This document shows, one piece after another, positions 3,649-43,035 of a stretch of DNA of 64,000 bases. Positions within the stretch are counted from its first letter, which is position 1; every line of letters begins with the position of its first letter. Below the pieces are notes generated by a model that searched no databases, was not told the DNA's origin, and worked only from the letters and a program-made list of their open reading frames with translations. The stretch is from Octopus sinensis (taxonomy: Eukaryota), in assembly GCF_006345805.1 (NCBI RefSeq), contig NC_043017.1, positions 13,702,001 through 13,766,000 on the forward strand, read 5' to 3'. Position numbers and translations under genes: made by a program.

Positions 3649-3770
3649 ATAGCTAAATAGAATTTTGAAAGAAATTTCTAGAAAACTAGTTTTTAAACAT
3701 CGAATGGCTATGGGGATCCACCAGAATAAAATAGTAATCCAAAGGGATCCATAAGTAAAAAAAAATATGG

Positions 3771-3936
3771 GGCGTAACTTCGGTATAAGTACCGGAAGTA
3801 CCGGATACAAGAAAGTGTTTTTTTTTATATATGGGTGGTTAGGGTTTGTGTTAGGGTTAGGGGTGGGAGAAAAGGGTTTCTCTTATCTTCAGAAATGTAA
3901 ACAAAGTCACATGTGTACCTATACCGAAGGTTCGCC
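3771..3936 (+). mobile_element. GG-terminal MITE family 2 (Merlin-like)
   Basis: TIR ggcgtaacttcggtata / tataccgaaggttcgcc, TSD aaaatatgg/aaaatatag, internal TTAGGG-like repeats. Confidence 0.75.
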
Positions 3937-4278
3937 AAAATATAGTTGAAAACCCCAGTTCTAAATCCTAAATCACACACCCAATTGTCTTTCGCAAATA
4001 GCAAACAGGTTGTAAATGTATATAATCCTAGATACACTTCTAAAAAGACAGGGGAAGTCACAGCAGGAACATTTTTGATCATGGATCAGTCTGTTCGCTT
4101 AGGACCAAACCTGGATCTAAATAGCAGCCACAGCGACATCCTCAAAACCTGCAATTTTCATAAATGAGTGAGATGAGCGCTGTAATGTTGAGCTAAGTTC
4201 TCTATGAGTGTTCCATGTAGTAACGATTTTCACTTCCCTCGAGGGAGTAAGTTACAAATGTCCCACTATTCTTTAAAG

Positions 4279-4395
4279 AGCGATCCTTCGGTATAGGTAC
4301 CGTAAGTACCGGAAGTGGCTTTGTTTACATTTCTGAAGATAACAGAAACCCTTTTCTCCCACCTCTAACCCTAACCCTAACACAAACCCTAACCC

Positions 4396-4448
<53 letters not shown>

Positions 4449-4498
4449 CTTTCTTGAAATATATTTGGTACTTCTGGTACCTATACCGAAGTTACGCC
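4279..4498 (-). mobile_element. GG-terminal MITE family 2, inverted copy
   Basis: Reverse complement of 3771-3936. Exact 8-bp TSD ctttaaag at 4271-4278 and 4499-4506. Confidence 0.8.
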
Positions 4499-4869
4499 CT
4501 TTAAAGCTGTATATTATCTTGCAAAACTAGCGAAATTTCTCATTTGCATTTTTTAAAAACTTTTTAGATAAAGAAGACAAAGCCACAACCTTTCCCATGG
4601 TTGTTAAAACTTCGCAGGCTCACATCTTAAGCCAGCCCTGATCAAGCAGACCTACGATCAAAGACGTTCCCAACTGTAACCCATTCAATCTTTTCGTTTC
4701 TCAAACGCTAACGTAGTATCTCAGACGACATTATCTATGTGATGCAACGTAGGGTATATTTTGAGGAAGATAGGGCTCCTGTTAATGGCAGACTCGAGTT
4801 CCTGTATAGAGGTTCTCATTGTAAGCTCGTCGCCATCGTCGCTGTTGTTGTTTAACCCAAGGTCATTCC

Positions 4870-4965
4870 TGATCAAACAGCTATGATCATATGATCAAAC
4901 AGCTATGATCATATGATCAAACAGCTATGATCATATGATCAAACAGCTATGATCATATGATCAAA
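4870..4965. repeat. 22-bp tandem repeat x4 (tgatcaaacagctatgatcata)
   Basis: Four exact units plus a partial, inside an older interspersed repeat. Confidence 0.9.
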
Positions 4966-5006
4966 GGTGTTCCAGGAGAATTCATCCCAAGTTTTTATTA
5001 TTATAT

Positions 5007-5064
<58 letters not shown>

Positions 5065-5078
5065 ATTATTATAATATA

Positions 5079-5466
5079 CTAGCAGTATCGCCCGGCGTTG
5101 CTCGGATTTGTAAGGGAAATAACTATATAAGCATTTTTAGAGAGTTATAGCCAAAAAATAGCAAAAAAATGCATCAAAAATGGAAAAAAAAATAATGGTA
5201 AAATTTTTTTTTAATCGTTGACTCATCGTAGACATTTTTAGAGAGTTACTTCCCTTATATAATAGCGAAAAAATGCATTAAAATGATGGTAAATTTTTTT
5301 TAAATCGTAGACTCATCGTAGACGCGCGCTAATACCCAGAAGGGCTCGATATGAATCACGACTATAAGATACCCGGTTTTGGTTAAACTGCACCGCAAAA
5401 TGTGGGAGTAGTTAGGAATCTAAATCGTAGGAGACAGACACACAACTTCACTTTTATATATAAAGA
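5079..5466 (-). mobile_element. Non-autonomous Helitron
   Basis: 5' TC end, 3' hairpin ccgagcaacgccggg then CTAG, no TSD. Matches copies at 36769 and 51681. Confidence 0.85.
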
Positions 5467-5587
5467 TATATATAGAACGCCATGATAGATCGTTAGCTCC
5501 TACACGCATTTTTTCTCTCCTTTTTTTTCTCTCCTTTTTTCTCTCCTTTTTTTCTCCTTGTTTCTCTCCTTGTTTCTTTTCTGTGTA

Positions 5588-5625
5588 TCTTTCTGTTGAA
5601 GAGCGTAGGCTCGAAACGTAAAAGA
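5588..5625 (+). ncRNA. Minimal type-I hammerhead ribozyme motif (Penelope-like), core variant CUGUUGA
   Basis: Stem I tcttt/aaaga, core ctgttga, stem II gagc-gtag-gctc, gaaac-gta with palindromic acgt stem III. Confidence 0.65.
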
Positions 5626-5722
5626 CTTGTTCTATTTCTATTCCTGAGCGCCATACTAATACATTTGTTTGTTTGTACTCCACCTGCCTTCGTCTCTTGT
5701 TTATTTTCGTAAACCTTCCCGT

Positions 5723-5789
<67 letters not shown>

Positions 5790-5793
<4 letters not shown>

Positions 5794-6900
5794 CGTTGAA
5801 GTGACAAAGGAGCATATTCGGCATATTTTTCTTTATGATTTCAATAAAGGTAACAACGTAACAGAAAGTGCTAGGAATATTAGTGCAGTATATGCGGATC
5901 GGACAATACGCGTAACCCAGTGTCAACGGTGGTTCCAAATATTCCGAGCTAGAAACTACAGCCTAGAAGACGAGCCTCGTCCTGGAGGATCTGCAAAGCT
6001 CGACGAGAACGTCCTGCAAAACCTGGTGGAACAAAATCCTATCGTAACTGTTGAGGAACTAGCAGAGAAGCTTGGGTTTGGTCATTCAAGCGTTCACAGA
6101 CACCTGCGTGCCATCGGATAAGTCAGCAAATTGGGTCAATGGGTTCCTCACAAACTTTCAGTGTCTAATCGCGCGCAGAGAGTGAATGTGTGCTCTTCTT
6201 TGCTGTCACGTCTCACGAATGAACTGTTTTGGATCGAATAGTGACTGGTGATGAGAAATGGGTTCTCTATAAAAATGTCAAGCGCCAAAGACAGCGGGAA
6301 GAGAAAGGAGAAAGACCGGCACCCCAGGCTAAAGAAGGTCTTCACTCACGTAAGGTCTTGTTATCTGTTTGGTGGGATATGAAAGGTTTAGTCTACTTTG
6401 AACTTTTAAACACAAACCAAATGATAAAGAAGGAGATCTACTGTGAGGAGCTTGAGCGGCTTAAGTCAGCGCTAGAAGGCAAGCGACCATCTTTGGTTTC
6501 AAGAGGAAAGATGTTCTTCCAGCAGGATAATGCTCGGTCACATACAGCGAGGATGACATTCCAAAGGCTGGAGCAGCTTGAATGGGAAACGATGCCCCAC
6601 CAAACATATTCGTCAGACATTGCCCCGTCTGGTTATCATTTATTCCGCAGTTTTCAAAATCATTTGGACGGAAAAAATATGAATTCTATAGACGAGGTCA
6701 ACACAGTACTGGAGGAGTATCTTTCATCACAAACAAGTAAATTTTGGAAGAGGGGGGCCTTGCAAGTCCACCGGATAGAGGGAAGAACATTTTAGAAAAT
6801 GAAGGCAAGTATAGTTTAGATTAAAAAAGAACTTTGTTTATCTTAATTTTGAAAAATAACAGAAGTATAAAAAACTCATTATTTATGGGATGACCCAATA
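5790..6900 (+). pseudogene. Mariner (DD34D) transposase pseudogene with 3' TIR
   Basis: WVPHKL, TGDEKW, QQDNAR and YSSDIAPSGYHLF motifs. Stop at 6119-6121 and a frameshift near 6229. TIR atttatgggatgacccaata; 5' TIR lost. Confidence 0.92.
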
Positions 6901-8949: not shown

Positions 8950-9296
8950 TTTTCAAACTCCACCTGTCTAACACCCGTGGACATATTTACAAAGTCAGAA
9001 AACAGCACAGCTCCCATGACTTCAGGAAACATTTTTTCACGCTGAGAGTTGCTGAAGCATGGAACAAACTCCCAGCATCAGTTGTTAGTTGTTGGAGCAC
9101 TGCATCCTTCAAAACTTCCATGCTTTCTGAGATTCGCCAACACTACACCTGATTTTCTCCCCTCCATACACACACAAGCATGTATCTGACTCATACATTG
9201 TTCGTTTTCCAGACATTTGTACATTACTGCATATACTCTGACAAGTTGTGGTGCACCTGAGCACTGTATACAATAATTTCATTATTATTATTATTA
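8950..9296 (+). mobile_element. CR1-type LINE 3' end
   Basis: Translates TRGHIYKVRK..FFTLRVAEAWNKLP; (att)n tail. Same tail inverted at about 47917 and 48905-49145. Confidence 0.8.
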
Positions 9297-10167: not shown

Positions 10168-10519
10168 ACACACATAAAATCAGGTAGTCATTGCGCATGA
10201 CGCTTTACAAGCCCTTTAAGATTAGTGCTGTGGTGGGAGGAAGACATCCTCAAACCGGAGACCTGACCCGACTCAGCTAAAGGTACCCAAAGGCTAGATG
10301 TACCCAAAGGCTAGATGTTGGTGTTAAACTGAGATGTGGGTTAAGTCTATCACCCAAGTGGCTCGCGGCGGAATTTGAGCTCAGAATGCAAAGAGCTGTG
10401 ACGAATACATTAAGGTATCCCGTCTAATACTCTAACGATTCCTCTAACGCACTGCTTTTGGCTGATACTTTTGTTATCGACCCCAGAAGAATGTAAAGCA
10501 AATATGGCCACAGCGGGGA

Positions 10520-10925
10520 TTTGTACTTCCAATACAATATTGGTTTCAAAATTTGGCACAGGGCCTGCAGTTTGTGGGGAGGAGGTAAGTGGATTACACC
10601 GAGCGCAGTCTGCAACTGGTGCATATTTTATCGAACCCGAAAGGATGAAGGGCAAAGTCAGCCTGGGCAAAATTTGAACTTAAAACGTAAAGACGAACGA
10701 AATACCTATTTCTATTTCTTTATTACCCACAAGGGGCTAAACACAGAGGGGACAAACAAGGACAGACATAGGTATTAAGTCGATTACATCGACCCCAGTG
10801 CGTAACTGGTACTTAATTTATCGACCCCGAAAGGATGAAAGGCAAAGTCGACCTCGGCGAAATTTGAACTCACAACGTAACGGCAGCCGAAATACCGCTA
10901 AGCATTTTGCCCGACGTGCTAATGG
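10520..10925 (-). mobile_element. Young Nin-domain SINE (family B) fused to an older Nin-SINE with a different tail
   Basis: gcctttcatcctttcggggtcgat Nin-like domain in both parts; junction at gaaata|ggtattt. Confidence 0.75.
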
Positions 10926-11092
10926 CTCTTCCAGCTCACCGCCTGAGACTTCGAATACAATATTGAAAGCTGGTTCTACAAACGAAACTTTGTATCATTC
11001 TTATGAAAATTCCTTGCAATGAAGTCGATTATTAAATCGGCTTCACAACAGGAAATTTCCATAAGAATTATACCAATAAGGTATCGTAGATA

Positions 11093-13808: not shown

Positions 13809-14032
13809 GTCTATCTTTACTACCCACAAGGGGCTAAACACAGAGAGGACAGACAAACGGATCAAGTTGATTACATCGACCCCAGTGCGAAACTGGTACT
13901 TTATTTATCGACCCCGAAAGGATGAAAGGCAAAGTTGACCTCGGCGGAATTTGAACTTAGAACGTAGCGGCAGACGAAATACCGCTAAGCATTTCGCCCG
14001 GCGTGCTAAAGTTTCTGCCAGCTCGCCGCCTT
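13809..14032 (-). mobile_element. Nin-domain SINE (family B) inside an old family A copy
   Basis: Matches the family. Confidence 0.85.
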
Positions 14033-14817: not shown

Positions 14818-15095
14818 TATATTTCGTTATTACCCACAAGGGGCTAAATACAGAGAGGACAAACAAGGACAGACAAATGGATTAAGTCGATTACATTGAC
14901 CCCAGTGCGTAACTGGTACTTAATTTATCGACCCCGAAAGGATGAAAGGCAAAGTCGACCTCGGCGGAATTTGAACTCAGAACGTAACGACAGACGAAAT
15001 ACCGCTAAGCATTTCGCCCGACGCGCTAACGTGTCGTCTGCCAGCTCGTGTCGTCTGCCAGCTCGTGTCGTCTGCCAGCTCGTGTCGTCTGCCAG
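14818..15095 (-). mobile_element. Nin-domain SINE with a 17-bp unit amplified ~4x at its 5' end
   Basis: gtgtcgtctgccagctc repeated at 15031-15095. Confidence 0.85.
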
Positions 15096-18047: not shown

Positions 18048-18650
18048 GAAGGTGGCAAGCTGGTAGAATTGTCATCATGCCGGGCGAAATGCTAAGTGAT
18101 ATTCGTCTGCCGCTACGTTCTGAGTTCAAATTCCGCTGAGGTCGACTTTGCCTTTCATCCTTTCGGGGTCGATTAAATAAGTACCAGTTACGCACTGGGG
18201 TCGATATAATCGACTTAATCCGTTTGTCTGTCCTTGTTTGTTCCCTCTGTGTTTAACCTCTTGTGGGTAATTAAGAAATAGGTATTTCGTCTGTCTTTAT
18301 GTTCTGTGTTCAAATTCCGCCGAGGTCGACTTTGCCTTTCATCCTTTCGGGGTCGATTAAATAAGTACCAGTTACGCACTGGGATCGATATAATCGACTT
18401 AATCCGTTTGTCTGTCCTTGTTTGTCCCCTCTATGTTTAGCCCCTTGTGGGTAATAAAGAAATAGGTATTTCGTCTGTCTTTACGTTCTGTGTTCAAATT
18501 CCGCCGAGGTCGACTTTGCCTTTCATCCTTTCGGGGTCGATTAAATAAGTACTAGTTACGCACTGGGATCGATATAATCAGCTTAATCCGTTTGTCTGTC
18601 CTTGTTTGTCCCCATCTGTGTTTAGCCCCTTGCGGGCAATAAAGAAATAA
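18048..18650 (+). mobile_element. Nin-SINE head plus three head-to-tail 184-bp units
   Basis: Junction gaaata|ggtatttcgtctg at 18281 and 18465. Confidence 0.9.
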
Positions 18651-21278: not shown

Positions 21279-21597
21279 ATATTCAATGGCGACTGCATAC
21301 TGAAACACGTATTTAGTAATGTCACGACCGTGCTGGATGATTTTCGTCTGCTGTTAAGCAGATTTCTTCTTTAGAAATTGAATAATTTTTTTTCTAACAT
21401 CGGTACGAAGCCAGAAATTTGGGGAAAGGAAGTTAGTCGACCAGCTCGACTTCAGTAATTGACTGCTACTTTGTTTTATCAATCCTGAAAGGATAAAAAA
21501 GCACATTTAAGATTTTGTAAATACACTGTAAGAATGCAAATTGGGCGAAATGTTAAAGCTTCCGTTAACTTGCTTTGCAGTATTCGTTCAGTCACAA

Positions 21598-21835
21598 GGC
21601 GGCGAGCTGGCAGAATCGTTAGCACGCCGGGCGAAATACTTAGCGGTATTTCGTCTGCCGTTACGTTCTGAGTTCAAATTCCGCCAAGGTCGACTTTGCC
21701 TTTCATCCTTTCGGGGTCGATAAATTAAGTACCAGTTACGCACTGGGGTCGATACAATCGACTTAATACCTATGTCTGTCCTTGTTTGTCCCCTCTATGT
21801 TTAGCCCCTTGTGGGTAGTAAAGAAATAGGTATTC
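21598..21835 (+). mobile_element. Nin-domain SINE (family B), full length
   Basis: Matches the family. Confidence 0.88.
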
Positions 21836-22929: not shown

Positions 22930-23463
22930 GCAACCACCAGGTAGCGATGAAAGTGAGTAAAACAATCGTTAACAGGAAAAAATACGAAATCAGTTTATGC
23001 ATGCCTGGGCGAAATGCGTGTCAGTAATGGTAACGGGTTGTAGTAATCATCAAATTCCGTGGCCTAGTGAGTTGCTTAAGTTCCTGCAGAAAGTTGGCTT
23101 TAGCTGTATCTCAACCACTACTCAATTACCAGACAAACCATCGATATTGGTCTGTAGGAAGTCTGGAACCATGCGTAACGACAGATCTGTCAAAGAAAAG
23201 GCACCAAAAACAAGATCGCTAATGACATTCCAGTATGTTGTTTATTCCATAAATGGTTAGGTTGTTTACAACAACAGCGACGGTCAACCCAGCTACAGAT
23301 AAAAACAAGTTATTAGTGTGTTTACCAGGAACCTGAATGGTTAGTCGCTTGCAGACAAAATCCCAGACCAAAATCCTGTTAAGTGTTTATAATTATTTTC
23401 CCGTCTGAACAGTAATGTCCTATGTGTCCCTTTTGAAGACAGAAGAATATAATTTGAAGTAAA

Positions 23464-23956
23464 AGGCGGCGAGCTGGCAGAAACGTTAGCACGCCGGGTG
23501 AAATGCTTAGCCGTATTTCGTCTGCCGTTACGTTGTGAGTTCAAATTCCGCCGAGGTCGACTTTGCTTTTCATCCTTTCGGGGTCGATAAATTAAGTACC
23601 ACTTACGCACTGGGGTCGATATAATTGACTTAATCCGTTTGTCTGTCCTCTCTGTGTTCAGCCTCTTGTGGGTAGTAAAGAAATATATATATGGGTGATG
23701 AGACCATATCCTGCTCTGCCTGATATGTTTAGCATCTATGTAGTAATTCCTGATGGACCTGGGGCTTTTCCTATTTTCATATTCTTGATTGTCTTATCTA
23801 TCACACTGCTGTCAACTAGGATAGACAGTCCCTCTGTTGGTTTCAGATCAGGAAGACTCCTAGTTACGCACTGGAGTCGATGAAATTGACTTAATCCCTT
23901 TGTCTGTCCTTGTTTGTCCCCTCTATGTTTAGCCCCTTGTGGGTAATAAAGAAACT
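23464..23956 (+). mobile_element. Chimeric retroposon: Nin-SINE + transduced flank + second SINE tail
   Basis: 14-bp TSD taatttgaagtaaa at 23450-23463 and 23957-23970. Segment 23685-23860 is nearly identical to 39987-40166. Confidence 0.85.
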
Positions 23957-24307
23957 TAATTTGAAGTAAAGTTAAGGTTATTTTTAGCAGGTCGATCAAT
24001 CATGTTGAAGTCTCTTCGAGGATTCAATTTGCTTCTAGTGTTTTTCAAGGTAGGTATTGAGTGTTGCTGCTACAATTACACAAAATAATTCTATAGGTTG
24101 TTAAACCTTTCCAAAAAGAAAAACGTACATAAACCACAATAAAAATAATTTTTCTAAAAACTAATGTTAAATATTACTTACATGGGACTTTCTTTAACGA
24201 AAAGTCATTTAATTCATTTTGAAGCGTAGTTTCGTATACTGGCATGGATAACCAAGTCAAGGCTCCATAATAATTTATAAGCAATCAGACTAAGTCATCG
24301 TTTCAGG

Positions 24308-24505
24308 ATGGGACAAACAAGGACAGACATAGGTATTAAGTCGATTACATCGACCCCAGTGCGTAACTGGTACTTAATTTATCGACCCCGAAAGGATGAA
24401 AGGCAAAGTCGACCTCGGCGGAATTTGAACTCACAACGTAACGGCAGACGAAATACCGCTAAGCATTTCGCCCGGCGTGCTAACGTTTCTGCCAGCTCGC
24501 CGCCG
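24308..24505 (-). mobile_element. Nin-domain SINE (family B)
   Basis: Matches the family. Confidence 0.85.
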
Positions 24506-25127
24506 TTTCAGGATACCTTCTTTCCTTACTTCCTCCCTTCCAACACTTTGGGAGGCCCTGAAAAGGTTCATGAGAATTGACCTTCTTTTGATTAAAAGAA
24601 AGAAAGATACAATACAATACAATCAGAGTAAACGAATCCCAGTCGTGACTCGACCCGTGTTTTTATATAGCTTCAATAAAATTCTCCAACGCGTCCATTT
24701 TTAAGACGGCAGGGTGTGATTTGAAAGAGAATTGGGCTGACATTTCTTGCAGCTTCGGCAACTGCGTAGATAATCTTCCCTCTGGCCCTACCCCACCACT
24801 ATCTGTCACAAGCCATACATATATATATATAAATATGTTTGATTCAAAACATCATCAAGGACAACAATGGTCGACAAACACTTCTAACGTTGTTTCTTTT
24901 CGTTTTCTTTTAATAGTGCACAGCGTGGCTTCAAATGAGGAAGAGTTAAGTTTCTAAATTTGAACAACGATTGTGTGTTACGTTAAGAAGTGATGTGAAG
25001 AGAGGTAATGCCAAAACCCAAGCCATATGTTTCATACTTCGTTTCTCATCTCACTGCACCCTCTCCCCCACTAAAACAGTATTTGTGTTTTTATTGAAAT
25101 TCTCTCACCATATGTTACTTTTATATT

Positions 25128-25510
25128 GTGGAGGCGCAATGGCCCAGTGGTTAGGGCAGCGGACTCGCGGTCGTAGGATCGCGGTTTCGATTTCCAGACC
25201 GGGCATGGTGAGTGTTTATTGAGCGAAAACACCTAAGGCTTCACAAGGCTCCTGCAGGGGGGGGGTGAACCCTGCTGTACTCTTTCACCACAACTTTCTG
25301 TCACTCTTTCTTCCTGTTTCTGTTGTACCTGTATTTCAAAAGGGCCAGCCTTGTCACACTCTGTGTCACGCTGAATCTCCTCGAGAACTACGTTAAGGGT
25401 ACACGTGTCTGTGGAATGCTCAGCCACTTGCACGTTAATTTCACGAGCAAGCTGTTCCGTTGATCGTATCAGCTGGGACCCTCATCATCGTAACCGACGG
25501 AGTGCTCCTA
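25128..25510 (+). mobile_element. SINE family C (tail 1), full length
   Basis: TSD tacttttatatt. Confidence 0.88.
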
Positions 25511-25781
25511 TACTTTTATATTAGAAAAGAAAAACTATTTTTATTGAGATCATACAAAGGAAAATTCTCTACAAAAATACTTGTTTAATAAATTGTCTCT
25601 CATAATACGTTATGTTATTAATTAACCTCATCGAGGGCGGTTGACAGCCAGAATCGTTAACACATCGGATAAAATGCTTAGCAGCATTTCTTCCGGCTCT
25701 TTACGTTCTCAAATCTGGCCAAGGTCGACTTTGCCTTACATTCTTTTTCGGGGTCGATAAAATAAGTACTAGTTGAGAACT

Positions 25782-26306
25782 TTGTTCCTTCTCGAGCCAT
25801 GCCTGGCTCATAAGGGCCGGTTTCCCGGTTTCCTTGATGTATAGGTTCCCCACCTGGACGGGACGCCGGTCCGTCGCAGGTGAGCTGCTAGATGCAGGAG
25901 GAAATAGGGAGAGAAAGTTGTGGCGAAAGAGTCAGCAGAAGTTTCGCCATTATCTTCTGCTGGAGCCGCGTGGAACTTAGGTGTTTCGCTCATAAACACA
26001 CACATCGCCCGATCTGAGATTCGAACCCGCGATCCCTCGACCGGTTTCCCGGTTTCTTTGGTGTATAGGTTCCCCACCTGGACGGGACGCCGGTCCGTCG
26101 CAGGTGAGCTGCAAGATGCAGGAGGAAATAGTGAGAGAAAGTTGTGGCGAAAGAGTCAGCAGAAGTTTCGCCATTATCTTCTGCCGGAGCCGCGTGGAGC
26201 TTAGGTGTTTCACTCATAAACACACACATCGCCCGGTCTGAGATTCGAACCCGCGATCACTCGACCGCGAATCCGCTGCTCTAACCACTAGGCCATGTGC
26301 CTCCAC
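25782..26306 (-). mobile_element. SINE family C variant (tail 2) with ~222-bp internal tandem duplication
   Basis: TSD tactagttgagaact at 25767-25781 and 26307-26321; inserted in an old Nin-SINE. Confidence 0.85.
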
Positions 26307-26789: not shown

Positions 26790-27539
26790 AAGCATGTATT
26801 AAAGTCGATGGTCTCAACTCTCTCTGTCCTCCTAAAACTGCTGGCCTTGCGTTAAAAATCTGAAATCGCGTAAGGTGGCCAGCTGGCAAATTTGTTAGCG
26901 CTCCGGATAAAATGCTTAGCGGCATTTCTTCTAGCTTTGCGTTCTGAGTTAAAATGTCGCCGAGATCAACTTTGCCTATTAGCATTTTGAAGTCAACGAA
27001 ATAAGCACCAATTGAGCACTGGGGTCGATGTAATAAACTTGACCCTATCCCCAAACCTCAGGCCTTATACATATTGTAGAAAGGATAATCATGATAATTT
27101 TTGTTGTTGTTGTTGGTGGTGGTGGTGGTGTTATCTATATAATAATCTGCTTGCTCGTTTGCCCGTTACACTTTAGGTAGTTAGAGAGGCTGAGGTGGAG
27201 TGAGTGAGAGGTGAGGTAAAAGTGAAAGAGTGGGAAGAATGTGAATAGAGAAGAAAAAAGAGAGGAGTATAATAATACATTAAGGCCAAATGCATCACGT
27301 GGTTAGTTGAAAGGAGAGTTGGAGAGCGAGAGAAAAAGACGGTGAGACAAAAGAGGGAGATGGAAGTGTTAACGACAGGCTGTAGGGTGGAGAAGAAAGG
27401 GTAAAGAGAAAGAGATATGTTTAGGATACAATATTTAGCAGAGGGTGATGTTCTGGTGGTAAGGCTAAAGACAGGCAGATAGAGAGAAATGAACGAGGAA
27501 GCCACAAAACATGAACAAAACAAAAAAAACTGGTTTCAG

Positions 27540-31814: not shown

Positions 31815-32395
31815 GGTGCGCTGGCAGAAACGTTAGCACGCTGGAGGAAATGCTTAGCGGTATTTCGTCTGCCGTTACGTTCTGAGTTCAAATTCCGCCG
31901 AGGTCGACTTTGCCTTTCATCCTTTCGGGGTCGATAAATAAAGTACCAGTTACACACTGGGGTCGATGTAATCGACTTAATCCGTTTGTCTGTCCTTGTT
32001 TGTCCCCTCTGTGTTTAGCCCCTTGTGGGTAGCAAAGAAATAGGTATTTCGTCTGCGATTACGTTCTGAGTTCAAATTCCGCCGAGGTCGACTTTGCCTT
32101 TCATCTTTTCGGGGTCGATAAATTAAGTACCAGTAATGGACTGGGGTCGATGTAATCGACTTAATCCCTTTGTCTGTTCTTGTTTGTCCTATTTGTGTTT
32201 AGCCCCTTGTGGGTAATAAAGAAATACGTATTTCGTCTGCCACTATGTTCTGAGTTCAAATTCTGCCAAGGATGAATCCTTTCGGAGTCGATTTAAATAA
32301 GTACCAGTTACGCACTGGGGTCGATATAATCAACTTAATCCGTTTGTCTGTCCTTGTTTGTCCCCTCTGTGTGTAGCCCCTTGTGGACAGCAAAG
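31815..32395 (+). mobile_element. Nin-SINE head plus three 184-bp tandem units
   Basis: (g/c)gtatttcgtctg at 31859, 32043 and 32227. Confidence 0.9.
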
Positions 32396-32688
32396 TAATA
32401 AGAAAGAGGACAGGAACAGGTATGCTGTTGTAGAGAAGATACATAGTTGCCCAGCCAGAGGGAAGAGCAAGGGAAGGAAAGAGAGAGTGAGAGACAGCAA
32501 GAGCAGGAGAGAGAGATGATGGCAAAGTATGCTTGCAAGGAACTGGGATCAAAGCATAGGTGAGATGGTAGCATGAGGTGCTGGCAGGGTATTGCCCAGA
32601 AGGTACGAGTAGGGAGTGGGGGTGGAGAATGCTGTAACTGTTGAGAACCTGGGTATACAGAGTGGGTAGGGAAAGTAACAATACCTAT

Positions 32689-33239: not shown

Positions 33240-33470
33240 CAGGTACCACCCACTATCAGTAGAGCTAAAAAAGAAGTAATTTCTACTCTTCTCCTCTGGA
33301 AGCCACCTACTCGCAATACCAGAGGGCGCACACTCTCCTACCCTGATGTAATCTCCAGGGATACAGGCATCCAGCAACAGGACCTCCGTAATGCCATGAT
33401 GGACTGTGAAGTCTGGCGTAGCATAGTAAATTCCATTGTCTCGACCACGGTCGAACAATGATGATGATGA
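33240..33470 (+). mobile_element. RTE-type LINE extreme 3' end
   Basis: LLLWKP...RGR..LSYPDVISRDTG...AMMDCEVWRSIV followed by (tga)n tail. Confidence 0.7.
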
Positions 33471-34450
33471 TCAGTAACCAGCACTTCTTTATACAGCTGT
33501 CTTCATTCATACGAATCACATGTTCAAACCAATGTAGTCTCCTCTCTTGCATGCATAATTTGATTTCTCTTATGTCCAATTTTTCTCGCAACATATTTGC
33601 ACTTTGTTGTTCATGTACATTGATACTACACATCCAGTACAGTATACTGCCTTCATGCCTGCTACATTCAGAGCCCATGTTTCATCACGATGAAGTATAG
33701 CCATTCGTACACAGGCATCATATAGTCTACCTTTCAGTGGAGGCGCAATGGCCCAGTGGTTAGGGCAGCGAACTCGCGGTCGTAGGATCGTGGTTTCGAT
33801 TCCCAGACCGGGCGTTGTGAGTGTTTATTGAGTGAAAACACCTAAAGCTCCATGAGGCTCCGGCAGGGGATGGTGGTGATCCTTGCTGTACTCTTTCACC
33901 ACAACTTTCTCTCACTCTTACTTCCTGTTTCTGTTGTACCTGTATTTCAAAGGGCCGGCCTTGTCACTCTCTGTGTCACACTGAATATCCCCGAGAACTA
34001 CGTTAAGGGTACACGTGTCTGTGGAGTGCTCAGTCACTTACACGTTAATTTCACGAGCAGGCTGTTCCATTGATCGGATCAACCGGAACCCTCATCGTCA
34101 TAACCGACAGAGTGCTTCCAATAGTCTACCTTTCACTTTGAGAAAGAGTCCATTTGTTGCCAACAGAGGTAGTAGTTCTCTGAACTTCTTCCCTCCTATC
34201 CTTATTCTAGAGACAATACTTTCAGAGCATCCACCACCATTACTAATTTGGTCACCTTAATAGCAGAAACTATCTACTACCTCAAGAGAGCTTCTTGGGT
34301 ATTTGAGAGAGTCTAAGCCCCATGTGCCCTTAGTGCTTATTGTTCCTGTGCATCTGCCACACATGAAGGGACCTTATCTTTTAATCTACCTGTGATTCCA
34401 CTACATCTCTTATGTGTCCATAGCTTACACTAGATGCAGGGAATGGAGTT
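33470..34450 (-). mobile_element. RTE LINE RT C-terminal fragment, split by a SINE
   Basis: WMCSINVHEQQSANMLREKL..RRLHWFEHVIRM; same family as 54090-55260. Confidence 0.8.
33737..34120 (+). mobile_element. SINE family C, full length
   Basis: 15-bp TSD atagtctacctttca. Confidence 0.9.
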
Positions 34451-34546
34451 ACTTTGCACTCCTTTCATACACATTGAACAGGGCCATTTGTCTGTGCATG
34501 TACATGAACATCGAACCAAATATCAATGGAAACAGTAGTTGTGATA

Positions 34547-34945
34547 CCTGTGCCGGTGGCACATAAAAAGCACCATCCGAACGTGACCGATGCCAACCCT
34601 GCCTCGAATGGCTTCTGTGCCGGAGGCACATAAAAAGCACCATCCGAACGTGGCCAATGCCAGCACCGCCTTGACTGGCTTCTGTGCCAGTAGCACATAA
34701 AAAAGCACCAACCGATCGTGGCCAATGCCAGACCCCTCTGGCACCTGTGCAGGTGGCACGTAAAAAGCACCCACTACACTCGCGGAGTGGTTGGCGTTAG
34801 GAAGGGCATCCAGCTGTAGAAACACTGCCAGATCAGACTGGAGCCTGGAGCAGACCCTGGCTCCCCAGACCCCGGTCGAACCATCCAACCCATGCTAGTG
34901 CAGAAAACGGACGTTAAACGATGATGATGATGATGATGATGATGA
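34547..34945 (+). mobile_element. RTE 3'-UTR module (63-68-bp repeats, V-like domain, (gat)n tail)
   Basis: Same module follows the RTE ORF at 55420-55725; also at 48177, 52935, 53775 and inverted at 39295. Confidence 0.8.
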
Positions 34946-34964
34946 AGGAGTCTTATCTACTTTC

Positions 34965-35130
34965 TTGCTAACAATAACTTTGGTCTTTGCTAAGTTAACT
35001 TTAAGGCCCTTGGATTCCAGGTTTTGCTTCCATACCTGGAATTTCTTCTCCAGTTCTGCTACAGATTCTACAATAAGAGCAAGGTCATCAGTGTAAACAA
35101 ATAATAAGTGGATGGCCAGAGACTGTGAAA
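34965..35130 (-). mobile_element. RTE reverse transcriptase fragment
   Basis: YTDDLALIVES..WKQNLESKGLKVNLAKTKV. Confidence 0.8.
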
Positions 35131-35352
35131 GATGTAGTGAAAAGTATAAAAAATCACTGGTCATTGAAAGAATGCCAGTCAGTACAGGATGTCTTAGTAA
35201 CAAAAGATGAGTGCATGGTCATTCCAAAACACATGCAAAACACCATTTTTCAGAGAATCCATGTTGCACATCGAAGAATTGAAAAGTGTCAATTCAAAGC
35301 AAGGAATATTGTTTATTGGAAAGGCATAAACAAAATCGAAGAACTAGTATGA
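35130..35352 (+). mobile_element. Gypsy-like pol remnant (integrase zinc-binding region)
   Basis: VIPKHMQNTIFQRIHVAHRRIEKCQFKARNIVYWKGIN. Confidence 0.7.
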
Positions 35353-35377
35353 TCGTGTGAAATAAGCAATTAGAACA

Positions 35378-36020
35378 TTGTGGCTGTGTGGTAAGTAGCT
35401 TGCCACATGGTTCCGGGTTCAGTCCCACTGCGTGGCATCTTGGGCAAGTGTCTTCTGCTATAGCCCCGGGCCGACCAATGCCTTGTGAGTGGATTTGGTA
35501 GACGGAAACTGAAAGAAGCCTGTCGTATATATGCATGTATATATATATGTATGTGTGTGTTTGTGTGTCTGTGTTTGTCCCCCTCTAGCATTACTTGACA
35601 ACCGATGCTGGTGTGTTGACGTCCCGTCACTTAGCGGTTCGGCAAAAGAGACAGATAGAATAAGTACTGGGCTTACAAAGCATAAGTCCCGGGGTCGATT
35701 TGCTGTTTTATAAGAAGCTTGGTTCCAAGTTCAGTCCCACTGTGTGGAAGCTTGGGTATGTGTCTTCTACCATAGCTTCAGGCCGACCAAAGCCTTGTGA
35801 ATGGATTTTGGTAGACGGAAACTGATGGAAGCCCATCGTATATATATATGTATATATGTGTGGGTGTGTCTTTGTGTCTGTGTTTTTTGTACCCCCATCA
35901 CCGCTTGACAACTGGTGTTGGTGTGTTTATGTCCTCGTAACCTAGCAGTTCGGGGAGAAAAGAAAAAACACCGACAGAAAAAGTACTAAGCTTTCAAAAA
36001 AGTCCTGAATGACTGAAACA
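35378..36020 (+). mobile_element. Two consecutive family A SINEs (young, then older)
   Basis: Approximately 35378-35705 and 35715-36020. Confidence 0.8.
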
Positions 36021-37727: not shown

Positions 37728-38069
37728 GAAGCACTCCGTCGGTTATGACGACGAGGGTTCCGGTTGATCCGAATCAACGGAACAGCCTGCTCGTGAAATT
37801 AACGTGTAAGTGGCTGAGCACTCCACAGACATGTGTACCCTTAACGTAGTTCTCGGGGATATTCAGCGTGACACAGAGAGTGACAAGGCCGGCCCTTTGA
37901 AATACAGGTACAACAGAAACAGCAAGTAAGAGTGAGAGAAAGTTGTGGTGAAAGAGTACAGCAAGGATCACCACTCAATAAACACTCACAACGCCCGGTC
38001 TGGGAATCGAAACCGCGATCCTATGACCGCGAGTCCGCTGCCCTAACCACTGGGCCATTGCGCCTCCAC
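37728..38069 (-). mobile_element. SINE family C (internal deletion)
   Basis: Matches the family. Confidence 0.85.
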
Positions 38070-38778
38070 ACGAGGCAGGTAACATCATGAGACTTGGAAA
38101 GCAGCACTTTGAGCAGCATTCCTTGTCCGATAGCTTTGAATATATGCCCAAAGAACTGTCCTGGAATAAATATAGAGAATCCCCTTGTTACACAAATATC
38201 AGCACAAGGAATACTGGTGGAATATTCCCATCAAAACATCTGTCAGGTGTAAGCATAGCAGGCTGGATATTGTTGTTTGGGACAAACAAGAAAAAGTATG
38301 TACTGTCATAGAGGTTCCAGTCTGATTTAGCTTGATTTCCTAATGCCAACCACTTTACCAAGTGTACTGGGCACTTTTAACATGGTACTGCACAAGCACT
38401 TTTATGTGGCGCCAACATGAGTGCTTTTCTTTTTACATGGCACCAGTGCAGGACTTTTGCAGACCAATCCTCTTCTCCAGTGGGGTTGGCCTTAGGACTT
38501 CTGCTGTGGAGTATGGGTCTTCTTTAGTACAGTAAAGCACCAGGTTTCTCAGTCCTTTTCGTCTGGAGGTCATCCTTCAGTACTTCATCTCATGTCTTCC
38601 TGGGTCTCTATCTGTGATCCAGGTGTCAAATAATATTTGTTATTAAAAACACAATGGATGCCTACTTTTTGAGGAATTTCAAATACACCAAAATACACCC
38701 ATTTGAAATCTAGCTTCTTCAATATCAAACTGTGTATATTATAATGTACAATATAAATAATATTACATCTCATGGCCA

Positions 38779-39186
38779 TACTCTCTTTTTACTCTTTTAC
38801 TTGTTTCAGTCATTTGACTGCGGCCATGCTGGAGCACCGCCTTTAGTCGAGCAAATCGACCCCAGGACTTATTCTTTGTAAGCCCAGTACTTATTCTATC
38901 GGTCTCTTTTGCTGAACCGCTAAGTGACGGGGACGTAAACACACCAGCATCGGTTGCCAAGCAATGCTAGGGGAACAAACACAGACACACAAACATATAC
39001 ACACATACATATATACATATACGACAGGTTTCTTTCAGTTTCCGCCTACCAAATCCACTCACAAGGCATTGGTCGGCCCGGGGCTATAGCAGAAGACACT
39101 TGCCCAAGATGCCACGCAGTGGGACTGAACCCGCAACCATGTGGTTGGTAAGCAAGCTACCTACCACACAGCCACTCCTACGCCTA
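38779..39186 (-). mobile_element. SINE family A, full length
   Basis: Matches the family. Confidence 0.88.
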
Positions 39187-39479
39187 TCCATGAATATTTT
39201 ATATCTATCTAAAGTGCACAAACAGAAACACCCAAAATATTGAAAGATAAAGACATGAAAAGAGGTTTTTTCCAGAAATATCAAAAAATAGTGATCAGCA
39301 CTACTGCTGCTGCTACATCATCATCATCATCCTTTAACATCCGTTTTCCATGCTGGCATGGGTCGGGCGGTTTGACCAGACTTTGCAAACCAGAGACCTG
39401 CATCAAATTCCAGCCTGATTTAGCTTGGTTTCTATGGTTAGATGCCTTTCCTAATGCCAACCGCTTCACAGTGTTACAC

Positions 39480-40166
39480 CAGTCATTGGGGATGACATCT
39501 TCCTGAACAACCTGATTGACTATATGGGTGATGAGTCCAAAAGACGGCGAGCTGGCAGAAACGTTAGCACACCAGGCGAAATGCGTAGCCGTATTTCGTC
39601 TGCCGTAACGTTCTGAGTTCAAATTCCGCCAAGGTCGACTTTGCCTTTCATCCTTTCAGGTCGATAAATTAAGTACCTATTTCTTTACTACCCACAAGGG
39701 GCTAAACACAGAGGAGACAAACGGATTAAGTCGATTACATCGACCCCAGTGCGTAACTGGTACTTAATTTATCGACCCCGAAAGGATGAAAGGCAAAGTC
39801 GACCTTGGCGGATTTGAACTCAGAACATAACGGCAGACGAAATACGGCTACGCATTTCGCCCGGGGTGGTAACGGTTTTGCCAGCTCGCCGCCTAATTAA
39901 GTACCACTTACACACTGGGGTCGATATAATCGACTTAATCCGTTTGTCTGTCCCCTCTGTGTTTAGCCCCTTGTGGGTAGTAAAGAAATATATATATGGG
40001 TGATGAGACCATATCCTGCTCTGCCTGATATGTTTAGCATCTATGTAGTAATTCCTGATGGACCTGGGGCTTTTCCTATTTTCATATTCTTGATTGTCTT
40101 ATCTATCACACTGCTGTCAACTAGGATAGACAGTCCCTCTGTTGGTTTTCAGATCAGGAAGACTCC
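39480..40166 (-). mobile_element. RTE RT fragment hosting nested Nin-SINEs
   Basis: After removing the SINEs the frame reads DKTIKNMKIGKAPGPSGITT*MLNISG..GLITHIVNQVVQEDVIPNDW; TSD tatatgggtgatgag. Confidence 0.82.
39544..39990 (+). mobile_element. Nin-SINE containing an antisense Nin-SINE (39678-39893)
   Basis: Inner TSD aattaagtacc at 39667-39677 and 39895-39905. Confidence 0.88.
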
Positions 40167-40167
40167 C

Positions 40168-40172
40168 TTTTT
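40168..40172 (+). terminator. Putative Pol III terminator (first T5 downstream of the 39544 SINE)
   Basis: The segment copied to 23.7 kb ends at 40166, immediately before this run. Confidence 0.5.
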
Positions 40173-41032
40173 ACTATGTATTCTCCACATTAAATAACCT
40201 TTTATAGAAACACTTCTATGCCTCTTTCTTATCAGAGTCACTAAGAGCAAGCATACCATTATCCGTCTGTACACACTTCTCACCTGCACCTTGATTCTCT
40301 CTTATACACTGTCCCGCAATTGGGAACACCTCTCATCCCCTGATCCTCATGTTGTAAAGCATTGACAAAAACCCCTTCCTTTCTACCTCTAATTTTGCCC
40401 TTCATGCTGTAAAGCATTGACAAAAACCCCTTCCTTTCTACCTCTAATTTTGCCAGACAAACCTGTTGTCTAGTTTCCCTTGTAGTTACCTGATATGCTT
40501 CTTTGCTACTTGCACTGTTTCACTCTTTCCAAGTCCATCTCTTCTCTTTTACAGCCCTGTCAACCTCACTGTTCCACCACGTCGTCCTTGGTCTGATAGA
40601 AGCTTTGTTCTAGCCACAGATTTGGTCAGTTGCTGCCTCTAGTTTATCCTGTAAGAACTTCCTGTTGTCCTCTGTCATACATCTCTATCACTCTCCTTCT
40701 CAGAAAATGCTTCAATTAGAACATATATGAATTTCTGTACATTTGAAGGATACTTAAGATTCCATAACATTCTTTTCCATATTGGTTTGTATCTCTGGGA
40801 CCTTCTAGCCCACTTGAAAGCATTTGTTGACCAACCCATGGCTACAATAGAAATCCAATGATTTCTCCACAGATCTGAGTCAGTTCTAAAAAGCAACAGA
40901 AGCAGGAGAAAAAAATAAAACAGAAAAATGTTTGGTTGAATTATAATTCCGATATTTGATTTTTTTTATTCTTGAAATTTACATTAGAAAAACATTAAAC
41001 AAACTCATCAAAATCATCACCATCAACAAAAC

Positions 41033-42752: not shown

Positions 42753-42802
42753 GTTTCATTTAAGTGAATGTAACATGAAAGATTACTTTAAATGAAATAT
42801 AT

Positions 42803-43035
42803 ATTTCTTTACTACCCACAAGGGGCTAAACACAGAGGGGACAAACAAGGACAGACAAACGGATTAAGTCAATTACATCGATCCCAGTGCATAACTGGTA
42901 CTTAATTTATCGACCCTGAAAGGATGAAAGGCAAAGTCGACCTCGGCGGAATTTGAACTCAGAACGTAGCGGTAGACGAAATACGGCTACGCATTTCGCC
43001 CGGCGTGCTAACGTTTCTGCCAGCTCACCGCCTTT
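42803..43035 (-). mobile_element. Nin-domain SINE (family B)
   Basis: Matches the family. Confidence 0.85.

What the first reader, a model, noticed from the sequence alone, without database searches (positions are those of the whole stretch)
23450..23970. Source-and-daughter pair: SINE read-through RNA captured by template switching
One insertion bounded by a 14-bp TSD contains, in order, a Nin-SINE, 176 bp of antisense RTE DNA and a second SINE 3' tail. The SINE shares private variants (agccgtattt, gtaccactta, loss of cttgtttgtc) with the outer SINE at 39544-39990, and the RTE piece differs by one T from 39987-40166. At 39.5 kb the RTE continues on both sides of the SINE with its own TSD, so that locus is the origin. 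The copied flank stops 1-2 nt before the first T5 run, as expected for Pol III termination. Inferred model: reverse transcription primed on a normal SINE tail, then jumped onto the terminated read-through RNA. This would let SINEs move flanking DNA that lacks a LINE-recognised tail, and it happened before the inner SINE inserted at 39678.
Basis: partly seen in the sequence, partly recalled or inferred. Interest (0 to 1): 0.7.

Follow-up and report, generated by a model that had tools for sequence, protein, structure and literature searches.

The report
Chimeric octopus SINE carrying neighbour's flank
In an Octopus sinensis chromosome, one short mobile-element insertion carries 176 bases copied from beside another such element 16 kb away, most likely because the copying enzyme hopped between RNA templates; this is a clear, source-resolved example of a known way that mobile elements shuffle DNA, not a new kind of system.

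Summary
The anatomy is real. A perfect 14-bp target-site duplication (23450-23463 / 23957-23970) encloses a full SINE, 176 bp identical (bar one T) to the DNA just 3' of the SINE at 39.5 kb, one extra T, and a second SINE tail from another subfamily. Orthologous loci in O. bimaculoides and O. vulgaris show the 176 bp has long lived at 39.99-40.17 kb, so the direction 39.5 kb to 23.5 kb is confirmed. The copy ends 1 nt before the first T5 run.

The mother-daughter claim for the SINE itself does not hold. The two SINE bodies differ at 16 positions (8%), against no substitutions in the next 198 nt. Positions 1-138 are no closer to the 39.5 kb SINE than to unrelated copies. Only one of the three "private" variants is private.

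Best reading (about 0.5): one LINE-driven insertion built from several RNA templates, including a Pol III read-through RNA of the 39.5 kb SINE, with at least two template switches. Main rival (about 0.22): DNA-level repair of a pre-existing SINE using the 39.5 kb locus as template. Genome-wide tests could not be run here. This is a new member of a known kind (chimeric retrocopies); interest is moderate.

The parts
23450..23463 (.). Left copy of the 14-bp target-site duplication, TAATTTGAAGTAAA
23464..23600 (+). SINE positions 1-138 (tRNA-like head plus conserved core). This part is not specially related to the 39.5 kb SINE.
   Evidence: There are 11 differences from the 39.5 kb SINE. The nearest copy is 24320-24504, with 4 differences.
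23601..23684 (+). SINE positions 139 to the end. It shares CACT, gatATAat and a 10-bp deletion with the 39.5 kb outer SINE but also differs from it at 5 sites.
23685..23860 (+). 176-nt copy of the DNA immediately 3' of the 39.5 kb SINE. It includes that SINE's right TSD copy and is antisense to a LINE reverse-transcriptase reading frame.
   Evidence: It is identical to 39990-40166 apart from T3 versus T4. T3 is the ancestral state.
23861..23861 (+). One extra T at the flank/tail junction. It may be an untemplated base or the first U of the terminator run.
23862..23956 (+). Second SINE tail (positions 139 to the end) from a different subfamily, with the 10-bp segment present
   Evidence: It is 93.5% identical to other copies and 80% to the 39.5 kb SINE tail. 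See also the alignment.
23957..23970 (.). Right copy of the 14-bp target-site duplication
39521..39539 (.). Left TSD copy of the outer SINE at the source locus (TATATGGGTGATGAGTCCA)
39544..39677 (+). Outer SINE, positions 1-138
39678..39894 (-). Inner SINE inserted in inverted orientation at outer-SINE position 138|139. Its TSD AATTAAGTACC lies at 39667-39677 and 39895-39905. It is absent from the 23.5 kb copy.
39906..39989 (+). Outer SINE, positions 139 to the end
39990..40166 (+). Source of the copied 3' flank. Its first 22 nt include the right TSD copy at 39993-40011.
   Evidence: The part from 40012 onward is orthologous in O. bimaculoides and the part from 40062 onward in O. vulgaris.
40168..40172 (+). 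First T5 run downstream of the outer SINE, a candidate Pol III terminator. It is conserved in all three Octopus species.
40012..40900 (-). Old LINE fragment (C-terminal end of the endonuclease, linker and N-terminal part of the reverse transcriptase). It continues at about 39470-39539 on the other side of the SINE.

Best explanation
Locus A (23464-23956) is one LINE-mediated, target-primed reverse-transcription event in the Octopus sinensis lineage, and it used more than one RNA template.

The proposed steps are as follows. Reverse transcription started, as usual, on the 3' tail of an ordinary SINE RNA and copied it back to SINE position 139. That position is the edge of the conserved core shared by several SINE families in this window. 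The enzyme then moved to the 3' end of a Pol III read-through transcript of the SINE at 39.5 kb (locus B). That transcript had run 177 nt into the flanking old LINE fragment and ended at the first T5 run. The enzyme copied this trailer back into the SINE part of the RNA.

The left-hand SINE body was then finished on another SINE RNA. There are two versions. In one, the enzyme switches back at about position 138/139, so that positions 139 to the end come from B. In the other, it re-initiates at the SINE's (TA)n 3' end on a sibling RNA of the same subfamily, so that only the trailer comes from B. The sequence cannot separate these two versions.

Shown: the anatomy, the single TSD, the direction B to A, the end point at the T5 run, and that positions 1-138 are not a recent copy of B. 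Inferred: the RNA nature of the template, the Pol III origin, and the number and places of the switches.
For: One perfect 14-bp TSD encloses everything.

The left element starts at the normal SINE 5' end.

The flank copy starts at B's SINE/flank junction and carries B's right TSD copy.

The flank is orthologous at B in O. bimaculoides and O. vulgaris. At all 7 substitutions that separate O. sinensis from O. bimaculoides in the flank, A equals B.

The copy ends 1 nt before the first T5 run, which has a chance of about 0.006-0.03.

The consensus SINE has no T4 run of its own, so read-through is expected.

The right-hand tail comes from another subfamily.

The family was active recently. The copy at 42801-43034 is absent from a clean empty site in O. 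vulgaris.

This SINE system shows other joins of a SINE 3' end to an internal site. There are TSD-flanked trimers and a dimer joined at AAATA|GGTATTTCG.

Several diverged SINE families lose homology at positions 133-139, so 138/139 is a module boundary.

There is precedent. Bipartite and tripartite LINE/SINE chimeras are known with a 14-bp TSD and switching at specific sites (PMC2104539). Template switching is the standard model for SINE module exchange (PMC4824008, PMC5729268, PMC4758252).
Against: The two loci are only 16 kb apart. Free reinsertion would put them that close with a chance of about 2e-5. This therefore requires capture of a locally made RNA, or else points to a DNA-level process.

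At least two switches are needed, not one.

If positions 139 to the end came from B, five differences within 64 nt have to be explained next to 198 clean nt. If they did not come from B, sharing CACT, gatATAat and the 10-bp deletion has to be put down to subfamily membership, and no other such copy is in the window.

The polymerase had to pass two T4 runs.

The junction has CC+T where the source has CCC+T5, so the RNA 3' end is not exactly as predicted.

No transcript data are available. The partner LINE and its tail were not identified.
Confidence: 0.5

Rival explanations
1. DNA-level patch. An ordinary SINE ('X' = 23464-23600 plus 23862-23956) was already at locus A with its own 14-bp TSD. 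It was nicked or broken at position 138|139. The 3' end at position 138 invaded the homologous SINE 16 kb away at locus B and copied positions 139 to the end plus 176 nt of flank. The new strand was then rejoined to X at position 139 by end joining, with one filler T. This is one-sided homologous invasion followed by non-homologous joining, as in synthesis-dependent strand annealing or microhomology-mediated break-induced replication.
For: Removing 23601-23861 restores a gap-free, full-length 232-nt SINE. Positions 1-138 are not B-like, while CACT, gatATAat and the 10-bp deletion start right after position 138. Position 138|139 is also where the inner SINE hit locus B. The antisense strand there reads GGTACT, which matches the GGTAYT target start seen at 4 of 11 insertions, so the partner endonuclease plausibly nicks there. 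Proximity in cis is natural for repair-template choice. The TSD is then simply X's own.
Against: The end of the copied tract next to the first T5 run would be a coincidence, with p about 0.006-0.03. Freshly copied DNA should match B, yet 5 differences lie in positions 139-202 against none in the next 198 nt. The single-changepoint fit puts the break in divergence at column 202 rather than 138. No allele with an uninterrupted X was seen.
Confidence: 0.22
2. There was one template jump. The whole left SINE plus flank is a copy of the B read-through RNA, and all 16 SINE differences arose afterwards by CpG decay, point mutation and gene conversion with other SINE copies.
For: It is the simplest path. 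It explains all four shared rare states. Seven of the 16 differences are CpG transitions and the flank has no CpG. An inverted SINE 97% identical to A's positions 1-138 lies about 640 bp away (24320-24504) and could have converted that part.
Against: There are 8-9 non-CpG differences in about 185 nt against 0 in 198 nt. B has 9 derived states, all within columns 4-145, that A lacks. A's positions 1-138 are as far from B (11 differences) as unrelated copies are (10-11). The SINE divergence (8%) exceeds the divergence between O. sinensis and O. bimaculoides in the same flank (4.6%). Conversion would need at least two tracts that skip 'agccgt'.
Confidence: 0.06
3. RNA ligation before reverse transcription. 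The trimmed 3' end of the B read-through RNA was ligated to a 5'-OH fragment of another SINE RNA beginning at position 139. The hybrid RNA was then retrotransposed in the normal way through its SINE tail.
For: RtcB-mediated ligation of the Pol III transcript U6 to LINE-1 RNA precedes retrotransposition of U6/L1 chimeras (PMC6789731). The single T at the junction could be the last U left from the terminator run.
Against: The sequence has no feature that tells ligation from a template jump. This model does not by itself explain why positions 1-138 are not B-like. One C is missing at the junction.
Confidence: 0.05
4. Ordinary retrotransposition of one continuous transcript from an unseen source. 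The source would be an allele or duplicate of locus B in which a 5'-truncated SINE had inserted at the T5 site, or an independent composite family.
For: It needs no template switch. T-rich sites are plausible insertion targets.
Against: In the assembled B locus, and in both other species, the LINE frame and the T5 run are uninterrupted. The flank occurs only twice in the window. It does not explain the divergent SINE body. The 16-kb proximity is unexplained.
Confidence: 0.05

Closest known systems
Bipartite and tripartite chimeric retrocopies formed by LINE reverse-transcriptase template switching (U6-L1 type in mammals; WEIRD / Mg-SINE / MGL chimeras in Magnaporthe; PMC2104539)
   Same: Copies of different transcripts are fused head to tail in one orientation. 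The 3' part is a 5'-truncated LINE or SINE tail. One TSD encloses the whole (14 bp in both cases). Double jumps and preferred switch sites have been described.
   Different: Here the captured middle piece is the non-repetitive 3' trailer of a SINE read-through RNA. Its source locus lies 16 kb away on the same chromosome. The LINE/SINE pair is a cephalopod one with a specific, non-poly(A) tail.
3' transduction by LINE-1 and SVA (Moran 1999, Goodier 2000 and Pickeral 2000, as cited in PMC13141329)
   Same: DNA directly downstream of a source element is carried to a new site. The end of the carried segment lies at a downstream termination signal. The source can be traced through the unique flank.
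   Different: Classical transduction uses one continuous Pol II transcript that ends at a downstream poly(A) site. Here the transcript would be Pol III, would end at a T run, and has no usable tail of its own. The tail comes from another SINE RNA.
SINE module exchange by template switching (PittSINE from TguSINE1, PMC5729268; MetaSINE and Deu hybrids, PMC4824008; mollusc 'jigsaw' SINEs, PMC4758252)
   Same: The result is head + new middle + LINE-type tail. The switch point coincides with a module boundary shared by several SINE families.
   Different: Those cases are inferred from family consensus sequences long after the event. This is a single young insertion with the donor locus still recognisable, and nothing shows that it founded a family.
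U6/LINE-1 chimeras made by RtcB RNA ligation (PMC6789731)
   Same: The 3' end of a Pol III transcript is joined to another retrotransposable RNA.
   Different: There is no evidence here for ligation rather than jumping. The organism and the element types differ.
Coupled homologous/non-homologous double-strand-break repair with templated insertion (one-sided invasion, SDSA; named from my own knowledge)
   Same: A tract copied from a nearby homologous repeat runs out into the donor's unique flank and is rejoined with a 1-nt filler.
   Different: That process would not predict an end point at a Pol III terminator, and fresh copies should match the donor.

Membership tests
Chimeric retrocopy made by LINE template switching | Two or more unrelated transcript copies are fused in the same orientation, and the 3' part is a 5'-truncated LINE or SINE tail. 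| tested here: met
   The order is SINE, then 176-nt flank of locus B, then a SINE tail from position 139, all on the + strand.
Chimeric retrocopy made by LINE template switching | One target-site duplication encloses the whole chimera, with no TSD around the parts. | tested here: met
   A perfect 14-bp repeat lies at 23450-23463 and 23957-23970, and there is none at the internal junctions.
Chimeric retrocopy made by LINE template switching | The 5' component ends at the natural ends of an RNA, not at arbitrary DNA break points. | tested here: inconclusive
   The 5' end is the normal SINE start. The 3' end is 1 nt before the first T5 run (p about 0.006-0.03). However, two T4 runs were passed and the junction is CC+T rather than CCC+Tn.
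Chimeric retrocopy made by LINE template switching | Each component is a faithful copy of its donor. | tested here: not met
   The flank is faithful (0 substitutions). The SINE body differs from the proposed donor at 16 of 202 positions. It therefore needs a third template or later changes.
3' transduction | The carried segment is contiguous with the source element's 3' end at an identifiable source locus. | tested here: met
   39990-40166 lies directly 3' of the outer SINE, and the locus is orthologous in two other species.
3' transduction | One continuous read-through transcript supplies its own 3' end for priming. | tested here: not met
   Locus B has no SINE tail after 40166. The LINE frame and the T5 run continue uninterrupted.
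tRNA-derived SINE | Internal Pol III A and B boxes, or a tRNA-like head, are present. | tested here: inconclusive
   A B-box-like GAGTTCAAATTCC and an acceptor-like GGCGGCG...CGCCG can be read in the sequence. ARAGORN calls no tRNA and Rfam finds no family.
tRNA-derived SINE | The element is short, dispersed in many copies with TSDs, and shows presence/absence differences between relatives. | tested here: met
   About 25 copies lie in the 64-kb window. TSDs were found for most. The copy at 42801-43034 is absent from O. vulgaris.
tRNA-derived SINE | The 3' tail is shared with a partner LINE. | not tested
   No LINE 3' end matching the tail was found in the window. No genome-wide search was possible.
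Nin-DC SINE superfamily | The Nin-DC central domain is present. | not testable with these tools
   No Nin-DC consensus is held in the papers reachable here. A conserved core ending at about position 138 exists, but its identity is unknown.
RTE-clade LINE | The reverse transcriptase groups with RTE, in a single ORF with an AP endonuclease. | not tested
   Only a generic reverse-transcriptase N-terminal motif, an RVT_1 match just under Pfam's cut-off, and a PHD-like finger were seen. Database searches with the peptide found nothing.
Ectopic repair patch (SDSA / templated insertion) | The recipient is a pre-existing homologous repeat, and removing the patch restores it exactly. | tested here: inconclusive
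   Removing 23601-23861 gives a gap-free 232-nt SINE. However, no unpatched allele was seen, and the divergence changepoint is at column 202 rather than 138.

The most novel reading that the evidence does not exclude
The 3' edge of the conserved SINE core (position 138/139) is a preferred template-switch point for the partner LINE's reverse transcriptase. During insertion, the enzyme samples RNAs made in the immediate chromosomal neighbourhood. SINEs with no terminator of their own could then routinely pick up Pol III trailers from nearby loci and re-equip them with a working tail. That would be a mechanism for local sequence shuffling and for the birth of new SINE middle domains, seen here with donor and product 16 kb apart.
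Probability: 0.15. Interest if true: 0.65.

Novelty: new member of a known kind. Interest (0 to 1): 0.4.

Why it matters
SINE families are mosaics of heads, cores and tails, and template switching is the usual explanation. That explanation is almost always inferred from old consensus sequences. This locus is a young single event with three useful properties: the donor of the middle piece is still identifiable, the donor locus is anchored by orthology in two other species, and the captured piece ends at a Pol III terminator. If the RNA reading is right, it shows that a terminator-less SINE can carry unique flanking DNA to a new site by borrowing another SINE's tail. It also shows that the borrowed template can come from a neighbouring locus. 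The practical value is that the case gives concrete junction probes and an orthologous site. With these, a whole-genome search can decide between RNA-level and DNA-level origins and measure how often this happens in octopus genomes, which are very rich in SINEs.

Tried and rejected
1. Segmental or DNA duplication of a larger block: rejected. BLAST of A +/- 2 kb against B +/- 2 kb shows no shared sequence outside the chimera except unrelated repeats.

2. Two independent adjacent insertions: rejected. There is one TSD around the whole and none inside.

3. A-to-I or other RNA editing as the cause of the SINE differences: rejected. All six positions where B has A and locus A has G carry G in the family consensus, and no consensus A became G. 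They are therefore G>A changes in B's lineage, not edits in the copy.

4. Uniform neutral divergence plus CpG decay: rejected. About 8-9 non-CpG differences in the SINE body stand against 0 in the next 198 nt.

5. Patch at 138|139 as the sole explanation: kept as a rival, not adopted. The likelihood changepoint lies at column 202.

Exact look-ups of three junction ORFs, two protein searches with repeat-derived peptides and five scans of the metagenome, prokaryote-genome and viral collections for the SINE core and for the CACT variant all returned nothing. These collections do not hold octopus repeats.

7. Reaching the orthologous A site: failed. The O. bimaculoides and O. vulgaris loci fetched through XPNPEP3 stop about 6-10 kb short of it.

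8. tRNA and Rfam scans of the window: no hit.

9. RNA folding of a SINE copy: no unusual stability (z = -1.5) and no obvious structure at position 138.

10. The B-locus empty site in other species: not readable. O. bimaculoides loses homology exactly after the right TSD copy, and O. vulgaris has a 1.14-kb microhomology deletion reaching 50 nt into the flank.
Full report
WHAT IS THERE.

Locus A. A perfect 14-bp direct repeat, TAATTTGAAGTAAA, lies at 23450-23463 and 23957-23970. Between the repeats, in order, are:
- a SINE at 23464-23684;
- 176 nt at 23685-23860;
- a single T at 23861;
- a second SINE tail at 23862-23956 that begins at SINE position 139.
In 20,000 random placements at the same spacing, only 35 gave even a 10-bp repeat.

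The 176 nt are identical to 39990-40166 except for T3 versus T4 at 40146-40149. They occur nowhere else in the window. The SINE is abundant, with about 25 copies or fragments in the 64 kb.

Locus B. An outer SINE (39544-39677 plus 39906-39989) is split at position 138|139 by an inverted inner SINE (39678-39894, TSD AATTAAGTACC). The outer SINE has its own TSD, TATATGGGTGATGAG(T/A)CCA, at 39521-39539 and 39993-40011. With the SINEs and one TSD copy removed, the minus strand reads ...GKAPGPSGITT*MLNISGRAGFG|LITHIVNQVVQEDVIPNDWCNT. This is a typical N-terminal reverse-transcriptase region of a non-LTR element. The SINE therefore inserted into a LINE fragment there.

Nearby pieces give a near-threshold RVT_1 hit and a PHD-like finger. 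The clade 'RTE' was not tested. ARAGORN and Rfam find nothing in the window.

ORGANISM AND ORTHOLOGY.

An intact, intronless 500-aa XPNPEP3 ORF lies at 43947-45449 on the minus strand. It is 96% identical to the O. bimaculoides protein. An exact look-up places the window on Octopus sinensis GCA_006345805.1, CM016879.1 (record = window + 13,702,000). The orthologous loci of O. bimaculoides (L001) and O. vulgaris (L003) were fetched. Both reach locus B but not locus A.

The flank is present at the orthologous place in both species. In O. bimaculoides it starts at window 40012, and in O. vulgaris at window 40062. Locus B is therefore the old home of the 176 nt, and the direction B to A is established independently of the TSD argument.

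In the flank, O. sinensis B and O. bimaculoides differ by 7 substitutions in about 153 nt (4.6%). At all seven, A equals B. At the T run, A, O. bimaculoides and O. vulgaris all have T3, so B's T4 is a later change. The T5 run is conserved in all three species.

Neither species keeps the SINE site itself. O. bimaculoides loses homology exactly after the right TSD copy. O. vulgaris has a 1.14-kb deletion with ACC microhomology.

The SINE family was active after the split between O. vulgaris and O. sinensis. The copy at 42801-43034 is missing from a clean empty site in O. vulgaris.

THE END POINT.

The consensus SINE has no T4 run. Downstream of B's SINE there are T4 runs at flank nt 80, 88 and 155, the last of which was T3 at the time of the event. 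The first T5 run is at 40168-40172. The shared tract stops at 40166. A random end point lies 0-2 nt upstream of a T>=5 run with probability 0.006-0.008, and upstream of a T>=4 run with probability 0.02-0.03. This is the main evidence that the copied template was a Pol III transcript. The junction reads CC-T-AGTTACGC where B has CCC-TTTTT, so the T may be a filler base or the first U of the terminator.

THE PROBLEM WITH 'DAUGHTER OF B'.

A and B differ at 11 sites in SINE positions 1-138 and at 5 sites in positions 139-202. They then show no substitution in the last 22 nt of the SINE plus the 176-nt flank. The single-changepoint maximum is at column 202. Seven of the differences are CpG transitions, and the flank has no CpG. 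Even so, 8-9 non-CpG differences in about 185 nt stand against 0 in 198 nt.

Polarised by the other copies, B has 9 derived states (six G>A, all in columns 4-145) and A has 7 (five C>T). In positions 1-138, A is closest to 24320-24504 (4 differences), 21596-21828 (7) and 42801-43034 (8), and has 11 differences from B. B in turn is as far from A as from unrelated copies. The 8% SINE divergence also exceeds the inter-species divergence of the adjoining flank.

- agccgtattt is also in the inner SINE and in 42801-43034;
- the 10-bp loss is also in 13814-14032;
- only CACT is confined to A and B.

Positions 1-138 of A are therefore very unlikely to be a recent copy of B. For positions 139-202 the evidence conflicts: three shared derived states against five differences. 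Rough likelihoods are about equal for 'from B' and 'from a sibling RNA'.

A SECOND COINCIDENCE.

Several features fall at SINE position 138/139:
- A's second tail begins at position 139.
- The switch from non-B-like to B-like inside A's first SINE lies between positions 119 and 140.
- Deleting 23601-23861 restores a gap-free 232-nt SINE.
- The inner SINE entered B at 138|139.
- Four diverged SINE families in the window lose homology to this SINE at positions 133-139.

Position 138/139 is therefore a module boundary. The antisense strand there reads GGTACT, which matches the GGTAYT target start seen at 4 of 11 independent insertions.

MECHANISM.

The single TSD, the normal SINE 5' end, the terminator-adjacent end point, the foreign tail and the recent activity of the family point to one target-primed reverse-transcription event that used several RNAs. 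Reverse transcription would have started on an ordinary SINE tail and left it at position 139. It would then have continued from the 3' end of a read-through RNA of B. Finally it would have completed the SINE body on another SINE RNA, either by switching back at about 138/139 or by re-initiating at the SINE's (TA)n end on a sibling RNA.

Double jumps, preferred switch sites and a 14-bp TSD are documented for LINE/SINE chimeras (PMC2104539). Template switching is the accepted model for SINE module exchange (PMC4824008, PMC5729268, PMC4758252). The window itself holds TSD-flanked SINE trimers and a dimer joined at AAATA|GGTATTTCG. This is a join of a SINE 3' end to an internal site through GGTATTT microhomology.

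I give this RNA reading about 0.5. Prior RNA ligation (PMC6789731) cannot be told apart by sequence.

MAIN RIVAL.

The two loci are 16 kb apart. This is very unlikely for free reinsertion and natural for repair-template choice in cis. The rival is that a pre-existing SINE at A was nicked at the 138|139 hot spot and repaired by one-sided invasion of B plus end joining. This reproduces the anatomy, the TSD and the non-B-like 5' part. It does not explain the end at the T5 run, nor the five differences in supposedly fresh DNA. I give it about 0.22. An unseen pre-joined source or a composite family gets about 0.05.

WHAT COULD NOT BE DONE.

No public collection reachable here holds octopus repeats. 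As a result, three tests were not run: the search for more daughters, the census of the CACT subfamily, and the read of the orthologous A site. These are specified under next steps.

VERDICT.

It is a new, unusually well-resolved member of the known class of chimeric retrocopies. Interest is moderate.

Noticed in passing
window 18049-18649, 31820-32400, 10463-10944: These are SINE multimers: a full SINE followed by one or two 184-bp units that start at SINE position about 49-51. TRF reports 3.0 copies at 18102-18649 and at 31859-32400. The units are joined at AAATA|GGTATTTCG, that is, a SINE 3' end meets an internal GGTATTT. The 18-kb array is flanked by AAGATTTATA, so it inserted as one unit. 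This could reflect template switching or a multimeric master element.
   Followed up: partly
window 42801-43034; L003 (O. vulgaris) reverse-complement 9100-9140: This SINE copy is absent from a clean empty site in O. vulgaris (TSD CTTTAAATG). It carries about 26 extra nucleotides (GAAACCGCCACTTCCGTAGTAAAAAA) between the TSD and the SINE 5' end. The family was therefore active after the split between O. vulgaris and O. sinensis.
   Followed up: partly
3' junctions of SINE copies at 21828, 26558, 32686 and 39678: Four of 11 independent insertions have a target that starts with GGTAYT right after the SINE end AAAGAAATA. The other insertions end in (TA)n. This suggests that priming needs microhomology to the RNA 3' end. 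The antisense of SINE positions 133-138 is GGTACT, which explains the nested hit at 138|139.
   Followed up: partly
window 2418-2484, 10463-10527, 25649-25769, 56681-56745, 26872-27040: These are diverged SINE families that share the head and a conserved core (...TTTGCCTTTCATCCTTTCGGGGTCGATAAATTAAGTACC) with the main SINE but have different tails. Homology ends at positions 133-139 in four of them.
   Followed up: partly
window 39544-39989 versus 23464-23684: The derived changes are strand-asymmetric. The 39.5 kb outer SINE has six G>A and no C>T. The 23.5 kb SINE has five C>T and no G>A. This points to strand-specific deamination at or after birth of each copy. The cause is unexplained.
   Followed up: no
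window 38300-40062; L001 reverse-complement 3121-6889; L003 reverse-complement 5855-6388: The DNA to the left of the old LINE fragment differs in all three Octopus species. O. bimaculoides loses homology exactly at the right end of the SINE's TSD (40011|40012). O. vulgaris has a 1.14-kb deletion with ACC microhomology. The site looks like a rearrangement hot spot.
   Followed up: partly
window 43947-45449 (-): This is an intact, intronless 500-aa Xaa-Pro aminopeptidase 3 (XPNPEP3) ORF with AMP_N and Peptidase_M24 domains. It is 96% identical to the O. bimaculoides protein. It was used to identify the genome and to fetch the orthologous loci.
   Followed up: yes
window 15030-15095: A perfect 17-bp tandem repeat with 3.9 copies (CGTGTCGTCTGCCAGCT), made from the SINE's 5' head, lies at the 5' end of the copy at 14819-15048.
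   Followed up: no
window 5669-6795 (+): Mariner-type transposase ORFs are present (for example ...QQDNARSHTARMT...SSDIAPSGYHLF...), split over two frames.
   Followed up: no
window 38790-38918 and at least 10 other places (for example 3233-3363, 46688-46814, 51391-51520): Another very abundant short repeat is present (...TTACTTGTTTCAGTCATTTGACTGCGGCCATGCTGG...). A separate 224-bp x 2 tandem repeat lies at 25817-26267. A different repeat is shared in inverted orientation between 25127-25506 and 37730-38070.
   Followed up: no
window 54447-54851 (+), 52230-52787 (-), 33300-36000 (-): Further LINE pieces are present. A PHD-like finger followed by a conserved C-terminal region occurs at 54.4 kb and again at about 34-35 kb. 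A CR1/L2-like reverse-transcriptase C-terminal domain lies at 52.2-52.8 kb. None ends in the SINE's tail.
   Followed up: no
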